The notes beneath the pieces were generated by a model. The model did no database searches. It worked only from the letters and a program-made list of their open reading frames with translations, and was not told where the DNA came from. The position numbers and the translations under genes were made by a program. This document shows, in pieces, positions 1 through 9,778 of a DNA stretch of 64,000 nt (its first letter is position 1; the number at the start of each line of letters is the position of its first letter). The stretch lies in IMG/VR virus record IMGVR_UViG_3300017917_001123, positions 62,001 through 126,000 of that record; one strand, written 5' to 3'.

Positions 1-433
1 GAGTGATTTAACTAAAGCCGCAAAAATAGCATTCGCAAGTGAATTTGCTTTTTACTTAAAAGCACAGAACTTCCATTGGAACGTCGAAGGTCCATTGTTC
101 CTTCAGTTCCACGATTTATTTGGTAAAATTTACGGCGAAGTTTATGATAGTATCGACGCATTCGCTGAGCAAATTCGTGCCTTAGGTTCTTATGCTCCTG
201 CGGCATTTAGCAAGCTCAGTATGCTAAGTCAAATAGACGATGAAGCAGATGTTTTGCCAGCAGACCAAATGCTTCAAGAACTTCTTGCTGATAATGAAAA
301 AATGATTAAAATCCTAAAAATGGTTTTTGATCTTTCTGAACAACAAGGTACAAACGGTTTTAGTGATTTCATCGCCGGACGCATGGATGCTCATGCTAAA
401 CACGGCTGGATGTTACGTTCTTCACTAAAATGA
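1..433 (+). CDS. dps: Dps/DNA-binding ferritin-like protein (5' end just outside the window)
   Basis: Frame is open from nt 2 (SDLTKAAKIAFASEFAFYLKAQNFHWNVEGP), upstream of the ORF-track start at 95. Dps motifs HWNVxG, FHxxF, D-x3-E (DAFAEQIRALG) and the C-terminal K-x2-WML are present. Confidence 0.9.
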   Translation, partial: SDLTKAAKIAFASEFAFYLKAQNFHWNVEGPLFLQFHDLFGKIYGEVYDSIDAFAEQIRALGSYAPAAFSKLSMLSQIDDEADVLPADQMLQELLADNEKMIKILKMVFDLSEQQGTNGFSDFIAGRMDAHAKHGWMLRSSLK

Positions 434-624
434 AAATCAACCAACTACTAGAAAATTTCGCCGATGGTAAAAAGCCAGGCCGCAAAGGCTTGGCAAAACG
501 TTCTGGAGTAAACTGTAAAGCATCAGTTTCAACTCTACGCAAGGTAGCTAAAAATAGCTCAGGCGAAAAACAACGTATGGCACACTGGTGTGCTAATATG
601 AAATCTGGTAAATCTAAAAAATAA
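430..624 (+). CDS. small basic protein, possibly an internal head protein
   Basis: ATGA overlap with dps; Lys/Arg-rich; N-terminal MKINQLLE resembles a prohead-protease-cleaved leader (L-x-E). Confidence 0.6.
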   Translation: MKINQLLENFADGKKPGRKGLAKRSGVNCKASVSTLRKVAKNSSGEKQRMAHWCANMKSGKSKK

Positions 625-731
625 GTGCGACCCCAATTTGCCCTGACGAATGCCAATTCGTTGATGCCGTACGAAGAAAAGTGGAAAATTCGTACATCTA
701 GGATCCTCGGAAGCCACTTTAACAGTCGCAC
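625..731 (+). ncRNA. candidate structured RNA with pseudoknot
   Basis: Pairings: 625-631/725-731, 645-651/656-662, 669-675/689-695, and a loop-tail pseudoknot 678-684/714-720. The G645-U662 pair favours the + strand. Confidence 0.5.
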
Positions 732-751
732 AAAATATTTAACATCAAGAC

Positions 752-781
752 TTGACTTTTATCTTAGCAGTAAAGTATAAT
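752..781 (+). promoter_or_regulatory. sigma70-type early promoter
   Basis: TTGACT-18 nt-TATAAT, followed by SD AGGAG and ATG 806. Confidence 0.75.
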
Positions 782-1108: not shown

Positions 1109-1407
1109 TGGATCATATTAGTAATGTCATTGTTGACATTTATAAGTGGGCGGAGAGGGACTATCGCGAATGGCCTTTTAGGTTTGTTATCGAAGTCCTT
1201 GCCTGGGCTATTAGCATTGGCTGTAGTATTACTATGGCCTTTACTGTGCCTACTCCTCCTCTACTTATTCTATATCCCATCTGGATCTTAGGATGTGCGA
1301 TGTACGGTTGGGCCGCGTGGACTCGCGGTAGTTTTGGAATGGTAGCTAACTATATTCTGCTAACCACAATAGATACTATTGGGTTAGTGAACATGTTAGT
1401 TAAATAA
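1108..1407 (+). CDS. small 3-TM membrane protein
   Basis: TAATG overlap; three hydrophobic helices. Confidence 0.7.
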   Translation: MDHISNVIVDIYKWAERDYREWPFRFVIEVLAWAISIGCSITMAFTVPTPPLLILYPIWILGCAMYGWAAWTRGSFGMVANYILLTTIDTIGLVNMLVK

Positions 1408-1415
1408 TAACGAGA

Positions 1416-1474
1416 AAGGTTTAGCGAGCCATAAGTCGCTGTTTAGAAGGTTAGCCGGCCATAAGCGGTAGGAG
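1416..1474 (+). promoter_or_regulatory. tandem hairpin translational operator upstream of DNA polymerase
   Basis: Two ~30-nt repeats AAGGTT(T)AGC-NN-GCCATAAG-NN-G: hairpins 1423-1440 and 1454-1469 with an identical 8-nt loop, abutting SD AGGAG at 1470-1474. Confidence 0.7.
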
Positions 1475-1479
1475 AAAAA

Positions 1480-4149
1480 ATGAGTTACATCGATGCCATC
1501 TGGGATCGTGACAACGACGTTGTACGTGTCGCTGAACGTGATCCTAAAAAGGGTAGAATCTTCGTAGATTATCCAGCCCGTTATCAATTTTATTACCCCG
1601 ACAATAAAGGAAAGTACAAATCCATTTACGGGGAAAGTCTATCAAAAGTCACTTGTAAAACATTCAAAGACTTTATCAAAGAACAAAAAATCCACTCAAG
1701 TCACAAGCTATACGAAAGCGACATTAACGCTGTGTTTCGTGTGCTTGAAGAAAACTATCTAGGAAAAGATGCTCCGAAACTAAATGTAGCATTTTTCGAT
1801 ATTGAGGTGGACTTCGATCCAGAACGCGGTTACGCATCTCCAGACGATGCGTTCATGCCAATTACTGCGATTGCTGTTCACCTACAATGGTTAGATACAC
1901 TGGTCTGTCTTGCTATTCCTCCAAAGACACTTACAATGGAGCAGGCACAAGAGTTAGTTAAAGATTTTCCTAACACACATCTCTTTGAAAGCGAAGCAGA
2001 GATGCTCGACACTTTCTTAAAGCTAATCGAAGACGCAGATATTCTTAGCGGTTGGAACTCGGAAGGTTTCGATATTCCGTACACCGTTAACCGGGTTACT
2101 AAAGCCTTAAGCAAAGAAGACACACGCAGATTCTGTTTGTTTAATCAATTTCCAAAGAAACGTGAGTACGAAAAATATGGGAAACAAGCTGTTACCTATG
2201 ATCTTGTTGGTCGTGTTCATTTGGACAGTCTCGAGCTGTACCGCAAATACACATACGAAGAACGACACACATATCGACTGGATGCTATTGGAGAGATGGA
2301 AGTAGGCGAAACTAAAACAGTCTACGAAGGCACACTTGACCAACTATACAACAATGACTTTAAAAAGTTTATTGAATATAACAGACAAGACTGTGCGCTA
2401 CTCGATAAACTAGATAAGAAACTAAAATTCATTGACCTAGCAAACGCTATTGCTCATGAAAACACAGTTCTGCTACAAACTACAATGGGTGCTGTAGCAG
2501 TTACTGAACAGGCTATTATCAACGAGGCACATCACCGTGGTATGATTGTTCCAAGTCGTACACGCAAAGACGAGCTTGGCGATACACAGGCCGCAGGTGC
2601 TTATGTTGCTTATCCAAAGAAAGGTCTTCATGACTGGATTGGATCTGTTGATATTAACTCTCTTTATCCGTCTGCGATTCGTGCCTTAAACATGGGACCA
2701 GAGACTATTGTTGGGCAGTTACGTCAAGATTACACCCAAGCAGAAATCGAAGCAAAAATGGCAAAAGGTAATTCTTTTGCGGCGGCTTGGGAAGGCAAAT
2801 TCGGTTCAAACGAATATGAGTTTGTTATGTCGCAAGACAAAGCCAACGACATTGTTGTCGAATGGGAAACTGGCGAAGAAGACATCTTGTCCGGTGCTCA
2901 GATCTATGACTTAATCTTTAATAGTAATCAACCATGGATGCTTTCAGCCAATGGTACAATCTTTACTTACGAAACAGAAGGTATTATTCCAGGCTTGCTC
3001 AAGCGTTGGTATGCTGAACGTAAGGACATGCAGAAAAAACTCAAAGAAGCAATTGACGCAGGTAATAAGATTGAAGAGGAATACTGGGACAAACGTCAGT
3101 TAGTTAAGAAGATTAACTTGAACAGTTTGTACGGTGCTATTCTTAACGCTGGTTGTAGATTCTTCGATAAAAGAATTGGGCAGTCTACTACGCTAGTAGG
3201 TCGTCAAATCTCCAAACACATGGCAAGTAAAATCAACGAAATTATTACAGGCGAATATGATTATCGTGGACGCTCTGTAATTTATGGAGATACTGACTCG
3301 TGTTACTTCTCTGCTTACAGTACACTAAAGAACGATATTGACAAAGGACGTTTGCCTTGGGATAAAGACGTTGCCATCCAACTGTACAACCAGATTGCTG
3401 ATGAAGTAAACGGCACATTCCCACAGTTTATGTTGGATGCGTTCCACTGTCCAAAGAGTCGCGGTGAAGTTATCAAAGCAGGTCGCGAAATTGTTGCGTC
3501 TAAAGGTTTGTTTATTACTAAGAAACGTTATGCTGTTCTTTATTACGATAAAGACGGAAAACGCTACGACACAGATGATAAGCCAGGCAAGATCAAGGCT
3601 ATGGGTCTAGACCTTAAGCGTTCAGATACTCCAGAATTTATGCAGAAGTTCTTGGAAGAAATCTTAACACGAGTCCTAAACGGCGCAGAAGAGCAAGAAG
3701 TGTTAGATCGTATTAGCGAATTCCGCACAGAGTTTAAAGCTCGCCCAGGCTGGGAAAAGGGTTCGCCTAAACGTGCTAACAACATTACAGAGTATGCGGC
3801 TAAGGAAAAGAAACAGGGCAAGGCTAATATGCCAGGTCACGTTCGAGCAAGCCTTAATTGGAATACTCTAAAACAACTTAACGGAGACAAATACTCAATG
3901 GGTATTGTTGACGGTATGAAAGTAATTGTTTGTAAGTTAAAAGATAATCCACTAGGTTATACCTCAGTCGCTTATCCGGTAGACGAACTAAGATTGCCTA
4001 AATGGTTCCAGGAATTACCTTTTGATCATGGCGAGATGGAAGCTACAATCATTAATAATAAACTGGAAAACCTAATCGGTGTGTTGGAATGGGACTTAGA
4101 CTCTACAACACAAAATAATACCTTTGGTAATTTGTTCACATTTGAATAA
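1480..4149 (+). CDS. gp43: family B DNA polymerase (T4 gp43-like)
   Basis: Exonuclease motifs FDIEV, GWNSEGFDIPY, YNRQD; polymerase motifs DINSLYPS, KKINLNSLYG, YGDTDS, KKRY. Confidence 0.97.
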   Translation: MSYIDAIWDRDNDVVRVAERDPKKGRIFVDYPARYQFYYPDNKGKYKSIYGESLSKVTCKTFKDFIKEQKIHSSHKLYESDINAVFRVLEENYLGKDAPKLNVAFFDIEVDFDPERGYASPDDAFMPITAIAVHLQWLDTLVCLAIPPKTLTMEQAQELVKDFPNTHLFESEAEMLDTFLKLIEDADILSGWNSEGFDIPYTVNRVTKALSKEDTRRFCLFNQFPKKREYEKYGKQAVTYDLVGRVHLDSLELYRKYTYEERHTYRLDAIGEMEVGETKTVYEGTLDQLYNNDFKKFIEYNRQDCALLDKLDKKLKFIDLANAIAHENTVLLQTTMGAVAVTEQAIINEAHHRGMIVPSRTRKDELGDTQAAGAYVAYPKKGLHDWIGSVDINSLYPSAIRALNMGPETIVGQLRQDYTQAEIEAKMAKGNSFAAAWEGKFGSNEYEFVMSQDKANDIVVEWETGEEDILSGAQIYDLIFNSNQPWMLSANGTIFTYETEGIIPGLLKRWYAERKDMQKKLKEAIDAGNKIEEEYWDKRQLVKKINLNSLYGAILNAGCRFFDKRIGQSTTLVGRQISKHMASKINEIITGEYDYRGRSVIYGDTDSCYFSAYSTLKNDIDKGRLPWDKDVAIQLYNQIADEVNGTFPQFMLDAFHCPKSRGEVIKAGREIVASKGLFITKKRYAVLYYDKDGKRYDTDDKPGKIKAMGLDLKRSDTPEFMQKFLEEILTRVLNGAEEQEVLDRISEFRTEFKARPGWEKGSPKRANNITEYAAKEKKQGKANMPGHVRASLNWNTLKQLNGDKYSMGIVDGMKVIVCKLKDNPLGYTSVAYPVDELRLPKWFQELPFDHGEMEATIINNKLENLIGVLEWDLDSTTQNNTFGNLFTFE

Positions 4150-8026: not shown

Positions 8027-8463
8027 GTCAAGAAAAAACACAAAGAGTTATGGATCAGGCCCAACGTCAAATCTGGGTAACCTTTCGCAAAGAAGGCATT
8101 CACAAATATCCTGCGGCCGCAACGGACCCCGCACTAGCAACCGGAGACGAATATGATGTTTCGTTCCTTGGTGTTCCTCATCGTCATATCTTCCATTTCC
8201 GGGTGTGGATTGATGTGTTCCACAATGACCGGGACATCGAATTCATCCAATTCAAACGTTGGCTCGAGAACCTGTATAATGGTCAAGGTGCCGTATTAGA
8301 ACTAAATTATAAGTCATGCGAGATGATCGCAGATGACTTATATCAGCAGATTACTTTGCGATATCCAGATCGCAACGTAAGCATTGAGGTAGCCGAGGAC
8401 GGCGAGAACGGATGCCTCATTCATTATAACCTTTCTCGCCCGTATCAAACTCTTTCTATTTAA
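8023..8463 (+). CDS. QueD-like T-fold protein of DpdL type (proposed CDG decarboxylase)
   Basis: H(KYP)...LGVPHRHIF = LxxxHRHxF in place of the QueD CxxxHGH; SCEM and C-terminal AEDGENG are the T-fold Glu positions. Confidence 0.75.
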   Translation: MSQEKTQRVMDQAQRQIWVTFRKEGIHKYPAAATDPALATGDEYDVSFLGVPHRHIFHFRVWIDVFHNDRDIEFIQFKRWLENLYNGQGAVLELNYKSCEMIADDLYQQITLRYPDRNVSIEVAEDGENGCLIHYNLSRPYQTLSI

Positions 8464-8474
8464 AGGAAAAGAAA

Positions 8475-8699
8475 ATGTCGCAACCAAAGTGGCTCGACAA
8501 ATATCTGGTTATGAAACCAGAAGTCAACAAGATCTTCGACGATCTTGAAGCATGGCACGATCATTGCCGTTTTGAAATGATCAACTTCAATCCGGCAGAC
8601 TTGTACAAGTCTAGGGAGTACAAGGAGTTTGCCAATAAGGGCAAGCGCCGTTTCCACAACTACAACGGATCGAAGCCATACCGTAAATTCAACCAATGA
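8475..8699 (+). CDS. hypothetical protein
   Basis: SD AAGGA; 74 aa; ATGA overlap with the glycosyltransferase. Confidence 0.65.
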   Translation: MSQPKWLDKYLVMKPEVNKIFDDLEAWHDHCRFEMINFNPADLYKSREYKEFANKGKRRFHNYNGSKPYRKFNQ

Positions 8700-9778
8700 C
8701 AGTATTCTTAGTAGACTTAGAAGCTGTTGAAACTAGGTACACTGGTCAGTGGAAGACTTGGGTACCTAGTCTTCTTAAAAAGGCGGGACACGATGTCACA
8801 GTTATCTCTGGACCTACTGACATTCCTAACAGTACCACTCCTGGTGCTTTTCTCAATTTTGGTGGTACAAATATATACAAAGCGAGACAAGTTGAGGAAT
8901 TTAGTAGGCTATTTTGCGCCGGAACAGTTAAGCCTGGCGATCATTTTCTGTTTACTGATGCTTGGCATCCTGGCATCACGAATCTAAAATACATGAGCGA
9001 GCTTCTTAACATACCTGTTAAGATTCACGCATTATGGCATGCTGGTAGTTACGATCCTCAAGACTTCCTAGGTCGTCTAATCGGAGATGCTCCTTGGGTT
9101 AGACACGCCGAAAAGAGTTTCTTCGAGTCAATCGATCACAACTATTTTGCTACAGACTTTCACATCGACATGTTCTTACATAATCTGCTCGACTTAGGTC
9201 GTTTTGCAGATAAAGAAATTGTCTTTGAAATGTTCAATACAGGAAAGATTGTACGTACTGGATGGCCAATGGAATATATGGAAGATACACTCTTAGACTA
9301 TAAAAATATGCCTAAGCGTGATTTGATTCTATTCCCGCATCGTATAGCACCCGAGAAGCAAGTTGAGATTTTTAGAGATCTCAAAGAACAGCTACCACAA
9401 TACGAATTTATTGTGTGTCAGGATCAACAGCTAACAAAGAATGAGTATCATAATTTGTTAGGCGAGTCGAAGTTGGTATTCAGTGCGAACTTACAAGAAA
9501 CCCTAGGTATTAGTTGGTACGAAGGTGCCATTGTAGATGCTATTCCTATGGTTCCAGATCGTCTAAGCTATTCAGAAATGGCATTTGATACATTTAAGTA
9601 TCCTAGTGAATGGACTGAAAGTTATGACGCCTATCTCAAACATAGACAAGAAATCTGCTTTAAGATAATCCAGTATATGGACAATTACGATCATATGTTA
9701 CCTATGCTTCGTAAGCAGACAGCTTATCTAACAGAAAACTTTTTTAGTGCTACAAAACTATTGGAAAATATAAAATGA
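8696..9778 (+). CDS. GT-B (GT4-like) glycosyltransferase
   Basis: FPHRIAPEK donor-binding loop; E-x7-E motif (QETLGISWYEG); VPDRLSYSE; two-domain length of 360 aa. Confidence 0.85.
   Translation: MTVFLVDLEAVETRYTGQWKTWVPSLLKKAGHDVTVISGPTDIPNSTTPGAFLNFGGTNIYKARQVEEFSRLFCAGTVKPGDHFLFTDAWHPGITNLKYMSELLNIPVKIHALWHAGSYDPQDFLGRLIGDAPWVRHAEKSFFESIDHNYFATDFHIDMFLHNLLDLGRFADKEIVFEMFNTGKIVRTGWPMEYMEDTLLDYKNMPKRDLILFPHRIAPEKQVEIFRDLKEQLPQYEFIVCQDQQLTKNEYHNLLGESKLVFSANLQETLGISWYEGAIVDAIPMVPDRLSYSEMAFDTFKYPSEWTESYDAYLKHRQEICFKIIQYMDNYDHMLPMLRKQTAYLTENFFSATKLLENIK

What the first reader, a model, noticed from the sequence alone, without database searches (positions are those of the whole stretch)
625..731. 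~107-nt intergenic RNA with a closing stem, two hairpins and a 7-bp pseudoknot
Seen: GTGCGAC(625-631) pairs with GTCGCAC(725-731). Inside are hairpin GACGAAT-GCCA-ATTCGTT (645-662) and hairpin GTACGAA/TTCGTAC (669-675/689-695), whose loop AAAGTGG (678-684) is perfectly complementary to CCACTTT (714-720). Four 6-7-bp pairings in ~110 nt of a gene-dense genome are unlikely to be chance, and there is no U-tract, so it is not a terminator. Inference: an unrecognised phage ncRNA, ribozyme or processing element. It starts at the base after the TAA of the 64-aa gene and that frame stays open to 780, so a readthrough stimulator is an alternative.
Basis: partly seen in the sequence, partly recalled or inferred. 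Interest (0 to 1): 0.7.

Follow-up and report, generated by a model that had tools for sequence, protein, structure and literature searches.

The report
Phage copy of the At1 small RNA
The ~107-nt intergenic structure is real, but it lies on the opposite strand: it is a divergent phage copy of an already catalogued small RNA of unknown function (Rfam Atu_At1, first seen in Agrobacterium), which turns out to be common in uncultured phages and to contain a conserved pseudoknot.

Summary
Window 625-731 holds a genuine, conserved structured RNA. It is not unrecognised. It matches Rfam RF02496 (Atu_At1, "Rhizobiales sRNA") end to end on the MINUS strand (37.6 bits, below the family cut-off of 60). 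Phage relatives in the same alignment pass the cut-off (64.6 and 63.3 bits).

A covariance model built from phage sequences only found 86 copies: the window, 70 viral contigs and 15 alphaproteobacterial genomes. It also hits the Agrobacterium At1 locus on the mapped strand, its span one base short of the mapped 5' end and ending at the mapped 3' end of the 113-nt transcript.

Close relatives of the phage lack exactly this module. On the minus strand a U-tract follows the closing stem. In bacteria the RNA usually sits behind a general-stress (EcfG-type) promoter, in several cases just upstream of ligD or xth.

Function is unknown. The best reading is an autonomous, compactly folded small RNA. 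Readthrough, a plus-strand RNA and known ribozyme classes are not supported. It is a new member of a known kind, of moderate interest.

The parts
622..735 (-). Whole RNA as delimited by the covariance model. It corresponds to the mapped 113-nt At1 transcript of Agrobacterium.
   Evidence: R1 match 622-735 minus, 111 bits. Rfam RF02496 match 627-733 minus, model 1-108/108. R1 spans record 55273-55161 at the At1 locus; the mapped transcript is 55274-55161.
725..731 (-). P1 5' strand (GUGCGAC), pairs with 625-631.
   Evidence: 7 of 7 pairs show compensatory changes in the family; coordinates.
625..631 (-). P1 3' strand (GUCGCAC). It starts one base after the stop codon (622-624) of the convergent 64-aa gene on the + strand.
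714..720 (-). Pseudoknot 5' strand (AAAGUGG), preceded by the conserved GUUAA (723-719).
   Evidence: Pairs with 678-684. 92% paired and 5 of 7 pairs compensatory; not in the search model.
676..688 (-). P5 loop UUUU-CCACUUU-UC. 678-684 is the pseudoknot 3' strand; the flanking UUUU and UUUC are near-invariant.
707..710 (-). P2 5' strand. It pairs with 632 and 634-636 (G633 bulged; one G-U). P2 is weak in this copy.
700..702 (-). P3 5' strand, pairs with 641-643 (C-G, C-G, U-G).
   Evidence: P3 is 98% paired in the family, with 32 G-U and 0 A-C cells, which favours this strand.
689..696 (-). P5 5' strand (U GUACGAA), pairs with 668-675.
   Evidence: Fully compensatory between the window and L156.
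645..668 (-). Core GGCAUCAACGAAUUGGCAUUCGUC. Family consensus is GG(CAU)CAACGAAnUGGCAGnCGaG, about 20 invariant or near-invariant bases.
616..624 (-). UUAUUUUUU directly after P1: a candidate 3'-end or terminator tract. On the + strand the same bases are the last Lys codons and the TAA of the 64-aa gene.
   Evidence: Sequence. U-tracts follow P1 in the Dps-linked phage copies too. Inferred, not shown.
735..741 (-). TAAATAT box ending 3 nt before P1 (731): a candidate promoter element. It could instead be the UP element of the + strand promoter at 752-781.
   Evidence: Same box at the same distance in L156, in the L233/L238/L239/L053/L269/L039/L047 clade (TATAAATATCTA|G) and in L063. The sigma-70 scan finds nothing on this strand. 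Inferred.

Best explanation
SHOWN. Window 622-735, minus strand, is a divergent phage-borne member of the Atu_At1 RNA family (Rfam RF02496). The fold has a closing stem P1, then stacked helices P2 and P3 leading to a junction. The junction carries hairpin P5 and an invariant ~20-nt core. The P5 loop forms a 7-bp pseudoknot with the strand between P1 and P2. The module is discrete: close relatives of this phage lack exactly these ~107 nt. INFERRED. It is made as its own ~110-nt RNA from the minus strand, convergent with the 64-aa gene. It would start at or a few bases before P1 and end at the U-tract after P1. It would work as an autonomous, compactly folded RNA whose invariant exposed core binds a conserved cellular partner (a protein, an RNA or a small molecule), rather than as a cis signal for the flanking + strand genes. 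In Rhizobiales the same RNA is driven by an EcfG-type general-stress promoter and peaks in stationary phase. The phage copy is therefore most simply a captured host stress RNA that the phage expresses during infection. A local side effect here would be antisense pairing with any + strand read-through transcript between the 64-aa and 100-aa genes. The partner and the molecular effect are unknown.
For: Identity and strand. Full-length minus-strand match to RF02496; relatives L034 and L013 exceed the family cut-off. The phage-only model R1 finds 86 copies. It also hits A. fabrum pAt at 55273-55161 on the minus strand, against the dRNA-seq and Northern-mapped At1 at 55274-55161, 113/115 nt. G-U against A-C cells: P3 32/0, P5 25/7.
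Structure. Strong covariation including the unmodelled pseudoknot.
Autonomy. The copies sit in at least eight unrelated contexts. These include directly after a phage tmRNA and before tRNAs, and after endolysin, membrane-protein, Dps and ribonucleotide-reductase genes. Others are antisense between genes or tRNAs, or have -10-like boxes placed so that transcription would start at P1. In bacteria there is no constant neighbouring gene, with 1-2 copies per genome by the model in five genomes tested; R. lusitanum has three further core matches.
Presence or absence. Five of the aligned relatives lack exactly the element, while L156 has it at the same spot.
Stress link. GGAAC-N15-18-[CG][ACG]TT lies 33-38 nt upstream in 11 of 22 bacterial copies, against about 0.008 expected per 64-nt window (motif as in PMC6599016). 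At1 is highest at high optical density.
Against: No transcript data exist for the window; no RNA run was listed. No recognisable sigma-70 promoter lies on the minus strand, and the TAAATAT box may belong to the opposite promoter. Overall the G-U excess over A-C is small (102 against 67), so the fold is nearly as good on either strand. In L063 the element is antisense to a tight tRNA array. This copy scores below Rfam's cut-off, has a weak P2, and has changes in the core (GG to UU) that lengthen P4. No partner is identified, and no complementary target site was seen in five host genomes beyond further copies of the element. In several bacteria the RNA sits 19-56 nt upstream of a gene like a leader, which fits a cis role.
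Confidence: 0.55

Rival explanations
1. It is a cis-regulatory leader or riboswitch-like sensor. The fold is an aptamer that senses a stress-related ligand or factor and controls the gene downstream. The '113-nt sRNA' would be the terminated or processed leader.
For: In bacteria an EcfG-type promoter is followed by the element, then 19-56 nt, then a same-strand gene: ligD in A. fabrum, A. vitis and R. rhizogenes, xth in Sinorhizobium, a PNPOx-family gene in Shinella and a GXWXG gene in Rhizobium. A hairpin with what look like compensatory changes, judged by eye, lies between the element and ligD. The number of invariant bases in junctions and loops (about 30) is typical of aptamers.
Against: Most phage copies, including the window's, have no same-strand gene downstream; 39 of 86 lie between convergent genes. 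Some bacterial copies carry their own strong terminator (L320, L275, L350). The downstream genes are heterogeneous. At1's mapped 3' end is at P1, not at the downstream hairpin. No Rfam riboswitch model matches.
Confidence: 0.2
2. It is an RNA-end protection, terminator or insulator module. A very stable knot placed at the 5' or 3' end of transcripts would block exonucleases or stop polymerase. In the window it would act on whichever strand is transcribed.
For: It lies directly after stop codons of unrelated genes and between convergent genes in 39 of 86 loci. U-tracts follow P1 in the Dps-linked group and on the window's minus strand. In bacteria P1 begins a few nt after the predicted start site. 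Nearly all pairs are Watson-Crick, so both strands fold.
Against: Simple hairpins suffice for those jobs. An invariant ~20-nt unpaired core conserved from rhizobia to phages is not explained. Many copies are followed by a separate ordinary terminator hairpin. Relatives do without it at the same position.
Confidence: 0.12
3. It is a new class of self-cleaving (or other) ribozyme.
For: Its size, its pseudoknot, its invariant junction nucleotides and its sporadic spread in phages and on plasmids with no constant gene partner resemble twister, pistol and hatchet RNAs (the comparison is from general knowledge).
Against: No ribozyme family matches at E up to 10. By my recall of those classes, the order of helix strands (P1a-PKa-P2a-P3a-P5a-PKb-P5b-P4-P3b-P2b-P1b) fits none of the HDV, hammerhead, twister, pistol or hatchet folds. 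At1 runs as one full-length 115-nt band equal to the dRNA-seq size. Promoter-like boxes put the start at P1, leaving nothing for a 5'-edge cleavage to remove.
Confidence: 0.06
4. It is a + strand element: a readthrough stimulator for the 64-aa gene or a processing site in the + strand operon.
For: It starts one base after the TAA, and the + strand fold has z = -2.6. + strand transcripts probably cross it, because there is no terminator before the next promoter.
Against: The family orientation is the opposite strand. Relatives with the 64-aa gene lack the element. The extended frame crosses the conserved promoter at 752-781. Substitutions are helix-compensatory, not synonymous. P3 loses pairs on the + strand.
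Confidence: 0.03
5. It is a DNA-level element: a miniature mobile element or recombination site with inverted ends.
For: Precise presence or absence among close relatives. It occurs next to tRNA and tmRNA genes in both orientations. It is found on plasmids and in phages. The G-U excess is low.
Against: No target-site duplication is visible at the junctions. There are only 1-2 copies per genome as a rule. An internal pseudoknot and covarying helices need a single strand. The RNA was detected experimentally at exactly the element's size.
Confidence: 0.04

Closest known systems
Rfam RF02496 Atu_At1 (A. tumefaciens sRNA At1; Wilms et al. 2012, PMC3384568)
   Same: Full-length alignment on one strand, the same helices and the same invariant core. 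A model built from phage copies alone hits the At1 locus within one base of its mapped 5' end and at its mapped 3' end.
   Different: The window copy scores 37.6 bits, under the cut-off of 60. It is phage-borne and has no EcfG-type promoter. Its P2 is weak and its P4 lengthened. The consensus structure line printed with the Rfam alignment draws a small local 5' hairpin where the phage and bacterial sequences together support a loop-to-5'-strand pseudoknot. The Rfam family name points only to Rhizobiales; I did not see its member list.
GsrN and other EcfG-dependent small RNAs of Alphaproteobacteria (Tien et al. 2018, PMC5869019)
   Same: About 100-nt RNAs behind EcfG-type general-stress promoters.
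   Different: GsrN was predicted near the stress-response locus and acts by loop base-pairing with mRNAs. The At1 family has no fixed locus, lacks a typical terminator tail in bacteria, and is a knotted fold. No sequence relation was tested or seen.
Stable small RNAs and large structured RNAs found in phage tRNA clusters (T4 species 1 and 2 RNAs; GOLLD and ROOL). From general knowledge.
   Same: Non-tRNA structured RNAs of unknown function embedded among phage tRNA or tmRNA genes, as in L013, L034, L002 and L063.
   Different: No sequence or structure relation. Most At1-family copies, including the window's, are not near tRNAs.
THF-I riboswitch (RF01831): topology only, recalled from memory
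   Same: A closing stem, a multi-helix junction and a hairpin loop that pairs with a strand between the outer helices.
   Different: The pseudoknot partner is on the other side. No Rfam hit at E up to 10. There are no folate genes nearby. Not a member.
Phage-borne self-cleaving ribozymes (hammerhead, twister, pistol, hatchet, HDV-like theta; PMC10879173)
   Same: Small, knotted, sporadic in phages, sometimes next to tRNAs.
   Different: No model match, a different strand order by my recall of those folds, and no sign of cleavage in the one member studied.

Membership tests
Rfam RF02496 Atu_At1 | Covariance-model score at or above the curated cut-off (60 bits) | tested here: not met
   The window scores 37.6 bits (E 1.4e-4 on 601 nt; 0.015 on the whole window). 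Homologues aligned with it pass: L034 64.6 and L013 63.3.
Rfam RF02496 Atu_At1 | End-to-end match to the model on one strand only | tested here: met
   Model 1-108/108 at 627-733 on the minus strand; nothing on the + strand.
Rfam RF02496 Atu_At1 | Homology by an independent model: a model built without any bacterial sequence finds the founding locus | tested here: met
   R1, built from 11 phage sequences, hits A. fabrum pAt 55273-55161 (minus strand) at 70.5 bits, and 15 other alphaproteobacterial loci.
Rfam RF02496 Atu_At1 | Shared helices (P1, P2, P3, P5) kept by compensatory changes | tested here: met
   In the window P1, P5 and the pseudoknot are perfect; P2 and P3 are weak but present.
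Rfam RF02496 Atu_At1 | Invariant core CAACGAAnUGGCA..CG | tested here: met
   Window 663-647 reads CAACGAAUUGGCAUUCG. It differs from the consensus at the two bases before the closing CG (AGG/AGN in the family, AUU here).
Rfam RF02496 Atu_At1 | Expressed as a discrete RNA of about 113 nt in the model's orientation | not testable with these tools
   Shown for A. tumefaciens only. No RNA run was listed for the window.
Known self-cleaving ribozyme classes (Rfam models) | Match to a class model, or the class's helix order and core | tested here: not met
   No hit at E up to 10. The helix order differs from the known classes as I recall them.
Known riboswitch classes (including THF-I) | Match to a class model; position upstream of a coherent gene set | tested here: not met
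   No hit. The window copy has no same-strand downstream gene.
Intrinsic terminator | Short G+C-rich hairpin immediately followed by a U-tract | tested here: inconclusive
   None on the + strand. On the minus strand a U-tract follows P1, but P1 encloses 93 nt, so the scan does not call it.

The most novel reading that the evidence does not exclude
The At1 family is a functional RNA class of a new kind, either a ligand- or factor-sensing fold or a catalytic one. It would be shared between the general-stress regulon of Rhizobiales, where it precedes DNA-repair genes such as ligD and xth, and many freshwater or soil phages, which would carry it to manipulate or mimic the host's stress or DNA-damage state.
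Probability: 0.15. Interest if true: 0.8.

Novelty: new member of a known kind. Interest (0 to 1): 0.5.

Why it matters
An 'orphan' rhizobial sRNA known only from one transcriptome study turns out to be a complex, pseudoknotted fold. Its core is invariant from Agrobacterium plasmids to at least 70 uncultured phage contigs. That degree of constraint is usual for RNAs that bind a specific partner or catalyse a reaction, not for ordinary base-pairing sRNAs. The work gives a corrected structure, the correct strand, a much larger alignment and a regulatory lead (EcfG-type promoters, with DNA-repair genes as neighbours). These make the function testable in a tractable organism, Agrobacterium. For the window itself, it marks a minus-strand RNA gene in what looks like a plain + strand operon.

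Tried and rejected
1. Searched for close DNA relatives among isolated phages by blastn with three family members; none found. The nearest isolate by DNA polymerase, Sinorhizobium phage Phosso at 51% identity, has no copy.
2. Searched for RNA-seq evidence. Only DNA metagenomes hold the window, and no RNA run was listed.
3. Tested for a T4-type late promoter. TATAAATA occurs once in 64 kb against 5.3 expected, so there is no evidence this phage uses it. The sigma-70 scan finds only the + strand promoter at 752-781.
4. Tested tRNA or tmRNA linkage as a rule. It holds for L013, L034, L002 and L063 only; the window has no tRNA.
5. Looked for a constant protein partner; none was found. The phage has no Ro/TROVE or RtcB gene.
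6. Tested a base-pairing seed. The complement of the core has no recurrent site in five host genomes apart from further copies of the element.
7. Looked for extra tertiary pairs by mutual information; none beyond the six helices.
8. Looked for a second copy in the phage genome; none.
9. Tested global G-U against A-C counts as a strand test. The result is weak (102 against 67); only P3 and P5 are informative.
10. Tested a class-wide survey. Only 1 of 151 sampled Alphaproteobacteria matched, and that one was the centre genome itself, so the family is sporadic. The filters were strict.

Full report
WHAT IS IN THE SEQUENCE. The window is bases 62001-126000 of a 331.6-kb IMG/VR jumbo-phage record from a pond metagenome. 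Around the finding all genes are on the + strand. They are a ferritin/Dps-like gene (95-433; Pfam Ferritin), a 64-aa gene (430-624), a 181-nt gap, a 100-aa gene (806-1108), a 99-aa gene and a family-B DNA polymerase (1480-4149). A near-consensus sigma-70 promoter (TTGACT-18-TATAAT, 752-781) precedes the 100-aa gene and is conserved in relatives. The + strand fold is better than shuffles (z -2.6); the nested minus-strand fold alone is not (z -0.7).

IDENTITY. An Rfam scan gave one hit: RF02496 Atu_At1, 'Rhizobiales sRNA', model positions 1-108 of 108, at 627-733 on the MINUS strand. It scored 37.6 bits against a cut-off of 60 (E 1.4e-4 locally, 0.015 for the whole window). The Rfam model finds no second copy in the phage genome; my own model R1 gives only one further, insignificant match there (13.9 bits, E 0.47).

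Two pattern scans of viral contigs and one of bacterial genomes, using the most conserved stretch, brought in homologues. So did a synteny search with the 100-aa protein. Two phage copies exceed Rfam's cut-off (L034 64.6 bits, L013 63.3 bits).

I built a covariance model (R1) from 11 phage sequences only. It found 86 copies in 90 candidate loci: the window, 70 viral contigs and 15 bacterial genomes. All the bacteria are Alphaproteobacteria: Rhizobium, Mesorhizobium, Devosia, Pseudaminobacter, Ciceribacter, Sphingomonas and Sphingopyxis.

R1 also hits the At plasmid of A. fabrum C58 at 55273-55161 on the minus strand. Wilms et al. mapped sRNA At1 at 55274-55161: 113 nt by dRNA-seq and 115 nt by Northern, strongest at high optical density, function unknown (PMC3384568). 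The family's sense strand is therefore anchored by experiment; the model ends at the mapped 3' end and starts one base inside the mapped 5' end. By homology the window RNA is the minus strand, about 735 to 622.

STRUCTURE. On the 78 distinct sequences, 86.7% of cells in my six-helix structure are standard pairs, against 58.2% after shuffling. The covariation score is 0.658 against 0.179 (0 of 500 shuffles reach it), and 0.07-0.11 when partners are slid by 1-3 columns.

Read 5' to 3' on the minus strand the order is:
- P1 (731-725 with 631-625)
- a conserved GUYAA
- the pseudoknot 5' strand (720-714)
- P2 (710-707 with 632-636)
- P3 (702-700 with 641-643)
- P5 (696-689 with 668-675), whose loop reads UUUU, then the pseudoknot 3' strand (684-678), then UUUC
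- the core GG(CAU)CAACGAAnUGGCAGnCGaG (668-645), which holds a two-pair P4

The pseudoknot was not in the search model, yet it is 92% paired with compensatory changes at 5 of 7 pairs. The top 18 mutual-information column pairs, and nearly all of the top 24, belong to these helices; the few unlisted pairs that rank high are mostly unpaired or adjacent columns, so no further pairing emerged. The consensus structure line printed with the Rfam alignment shows a small local hairpin in place of the pseudoknot.

This copy has UU where the family has GG, which makes six pairs. In the family only C-G and G-C are kept, and the third pair forms in 8 of 78 sequences.

Strand evidence from wobble pairs is clear in P3 (32 G-U, 0 A-C) and P5 (25 against 7), but weak overall (102 against 67). 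The consensus nested helices score -17.4 kcal/mol on the window's minus strand and -12.9 on the + strand.

A DISCRETE MODULE. Several relatives carry the 64-aa gene, or only the Dps gene, followed by the same conserved promoter but without the element (L183, L187, L127, L128, L133). L156 has the element at the same place with different upstream genes. Homology breaks fall at 625 and 731/732. A wider clade shares the order 'element (antisense), 100-aa gene, 99-aa gene, polymerase' (L039, L047, L053, L085, L156).

CONTEXTS. Thirty-nine of 86 copies lie between convergent genes, directly after the stop codon of a same-strand gene. Those genes are unrelated: GH19- or lysozyme-type endolysins, a 136-139-aa membrane protein, a 74-aa membrane protein, Dps (14 loci) and ribonucleotide reductase.
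- In the Dps group a U-tract follows P1.
- In L013, L034 and L002 the element starts 4 nt after the CCA end of a phage tmRNA gene. In L013 it ends 8 nt before tRNA-Tyr, -Trp and -Glu, all in the same orientation.
- In L063 it fills the gap between two tRNA genes in the opposite orientation.
- In one group a -10-like TATACT or TACAAT box sits 7 nt before the first G of P1, and the next gene's -35 abuts P1's end.
- In the window's clade and in L063 a (T)ATAAATAT box ends 3-4 nt before P1. The window has TTAAATAT (742-735).

The window's minus strand has no sigma-70 match, and the phage does not seem to use TATAAATA. That box may instead be the UP element of the + strand promoter, so the window's own promoter remains an inference. 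Directly after P1 the minus strand reads UUAUUUUUU (624-616).

IN BACTERIA. The five genomes tested hold 1-2 copies by the model; R. lusitanum has three further matches to the core, five in all. There are copies on 79 plasmid or chromid records, all but a few unnamed ones listed as rhizobial or related alphaproteobacterial genera. None was found in the other 150 sampled Alphaproteobacteria, so the family is sporadic. Neighbouring genes are ordinary and varied.

Two regularities emerged. First, GGAAC-N15-18-[CG][ACG]TT lies 33-38 nt upstream of the model start in 11 of 22 copies, against about 0.008 expected per 64-nt window; by eye about five more (L317, L323, L375, L365, L319) carry near-variants (GCAAC or GAAAC with CGTT). 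This is the EcfG general-stress promoter motif (GGAAC-N17-20-GTT in PMC6599016). It fits At1's stationary-phase peak.

Second, in several species a same-strand gene starts 19-56 nt downstream: ligD in A. fabrum, A. vitis and R. rhizogenes, xth in Sinorhizobium, and PNPOx-family and GXWXG genes. A hairpin with what look like compensatory changes, judged by eye, lies between the element and ligD. Other copies have their own strong terminator.

INTERPRETATION. The identity, strand and fold are well supported. The function is not known for any member. The RNA keeps the same knotted fold and core in 5' leaders, 3' trailers, stable-RNA operons and stand-alone units. In the one organism studied it accumulates as exactly the folded domain. 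I therefore favour an autonomous folded RNA that acts through its invariant core on a conserved partner, with the phage copy as a captured host stress RNA.

A cis sensor role (bacterial leader arrangement) and an end-protection or terminator role remain possible. A ribozyme is unlikely: there are no model hits, the strand order differs from the known classes as I recall them, and At1 gives a single full-length band. The + strand readthrough idea is contradicted by strand, by relatives that lack the element, and by the substitution pattern.

The nearest isolated phage by polymerase is Sinorhizobium phage Phosso at 51% identity. This hints at an alphaproteobacterial host, but Phosso lacks the RNA.

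VERDICT. The finding is a real feature and was correctly spotted, but on the wrong strand, and it is already catalogued as a family. What is new is the phage distribution, the pseudoknot and core, the presence-or-absence behaviour and the general-stress promoter link. It is a new member of a known kind; interest 0.5.

Noticed in passing
L013:8-756; L034:617-1110; L002:~8440-8934: Phage contigs carry a one-piece tmRNA gene (Rfam RF00023, 74-88 bits) that ARAGORN did not report. It is followed 4 nt later by the At1-family RNA and, in L013, by tRNA-Tyr, -Trp and -Glu. This looks like a compact stable-RNA operon.
   Followed up: partly
L394:2925-3160 and other bacterial loci (L400, L409, L395, L396, L408, L282, L329, L350): EcfG-type general-stress promoter motif (GGAAC-N16-17-CGTT or CATT) upstream of bacterial copies. 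ligD, xth or general-stress-type genes start 19-56 nt downstream. A hairpin that appears by eye to covary lies between the RNA and ligD.
   Followed up: partly
window 752-781 (+): Near-consensus sigma-70 promoter TTGACT-18-TATAAT for the 100-aa gene (PHROG 12534; weak match to a transcriptional-regulator PHROG). It is conserved with its A/T-rich upstream box across dozens of related contigs.
   Followed up: partly
window 95-433 (+) and 14 viral loci (e.g. L019:2516-2944): Phage-encoded Dps/ferritin-like genes. In an unrelated phage group the At1-family RNA follows the Dps stop codon in the sense orientation. In the window it lies about 200 nt downstream of the Dps gene but inverted.
   Followed up: partly
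L063:1-1200: Phage tRNA array of at least 14 tRNAs with the At1-family RNA inserted antisense between tRNA-Val and tRNA-Glu (gaps of 1 and 13 nt by ARAGORN coordinates). An ATAAATAT box lies in the 13-nt gap.
   Followed up: partly
G005 (Rhizobium lusitanum P1-7): C30:1246, C31:176341, C44:544419, C48:56696, C77:11142: Five exact matches to the invariant core in one genome. Only two were scored as full copies by the model, so there may be up to five copies.
   Followed up: no
window 1-64000: No tRNA gene in 64 kb of this jumbo phage (ARAGORN). TATAAATA is under-represented (1 against 5.3 expected).
   Followed up: no
window 1401-1479 versus L122-L125, L132, L140, L197: In several relatives 0.7-1.6 kb of extra DNA sits between the 99-aa gene and the DNA polymerase gene. 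BLAST homology resumes at about query position 1401-1423. This is another variable insertion point in the same region.
   Followed up: no
L396 (Shinella sp. HZN7 pShin-02): The RNA lies 67 nt downstream of rtcR (RNA-repair activator) and next to UdgX and radical-SAM DNA-repair genes. No Ro or RtcB gene is present in the window's phage.
   Followed up: partly
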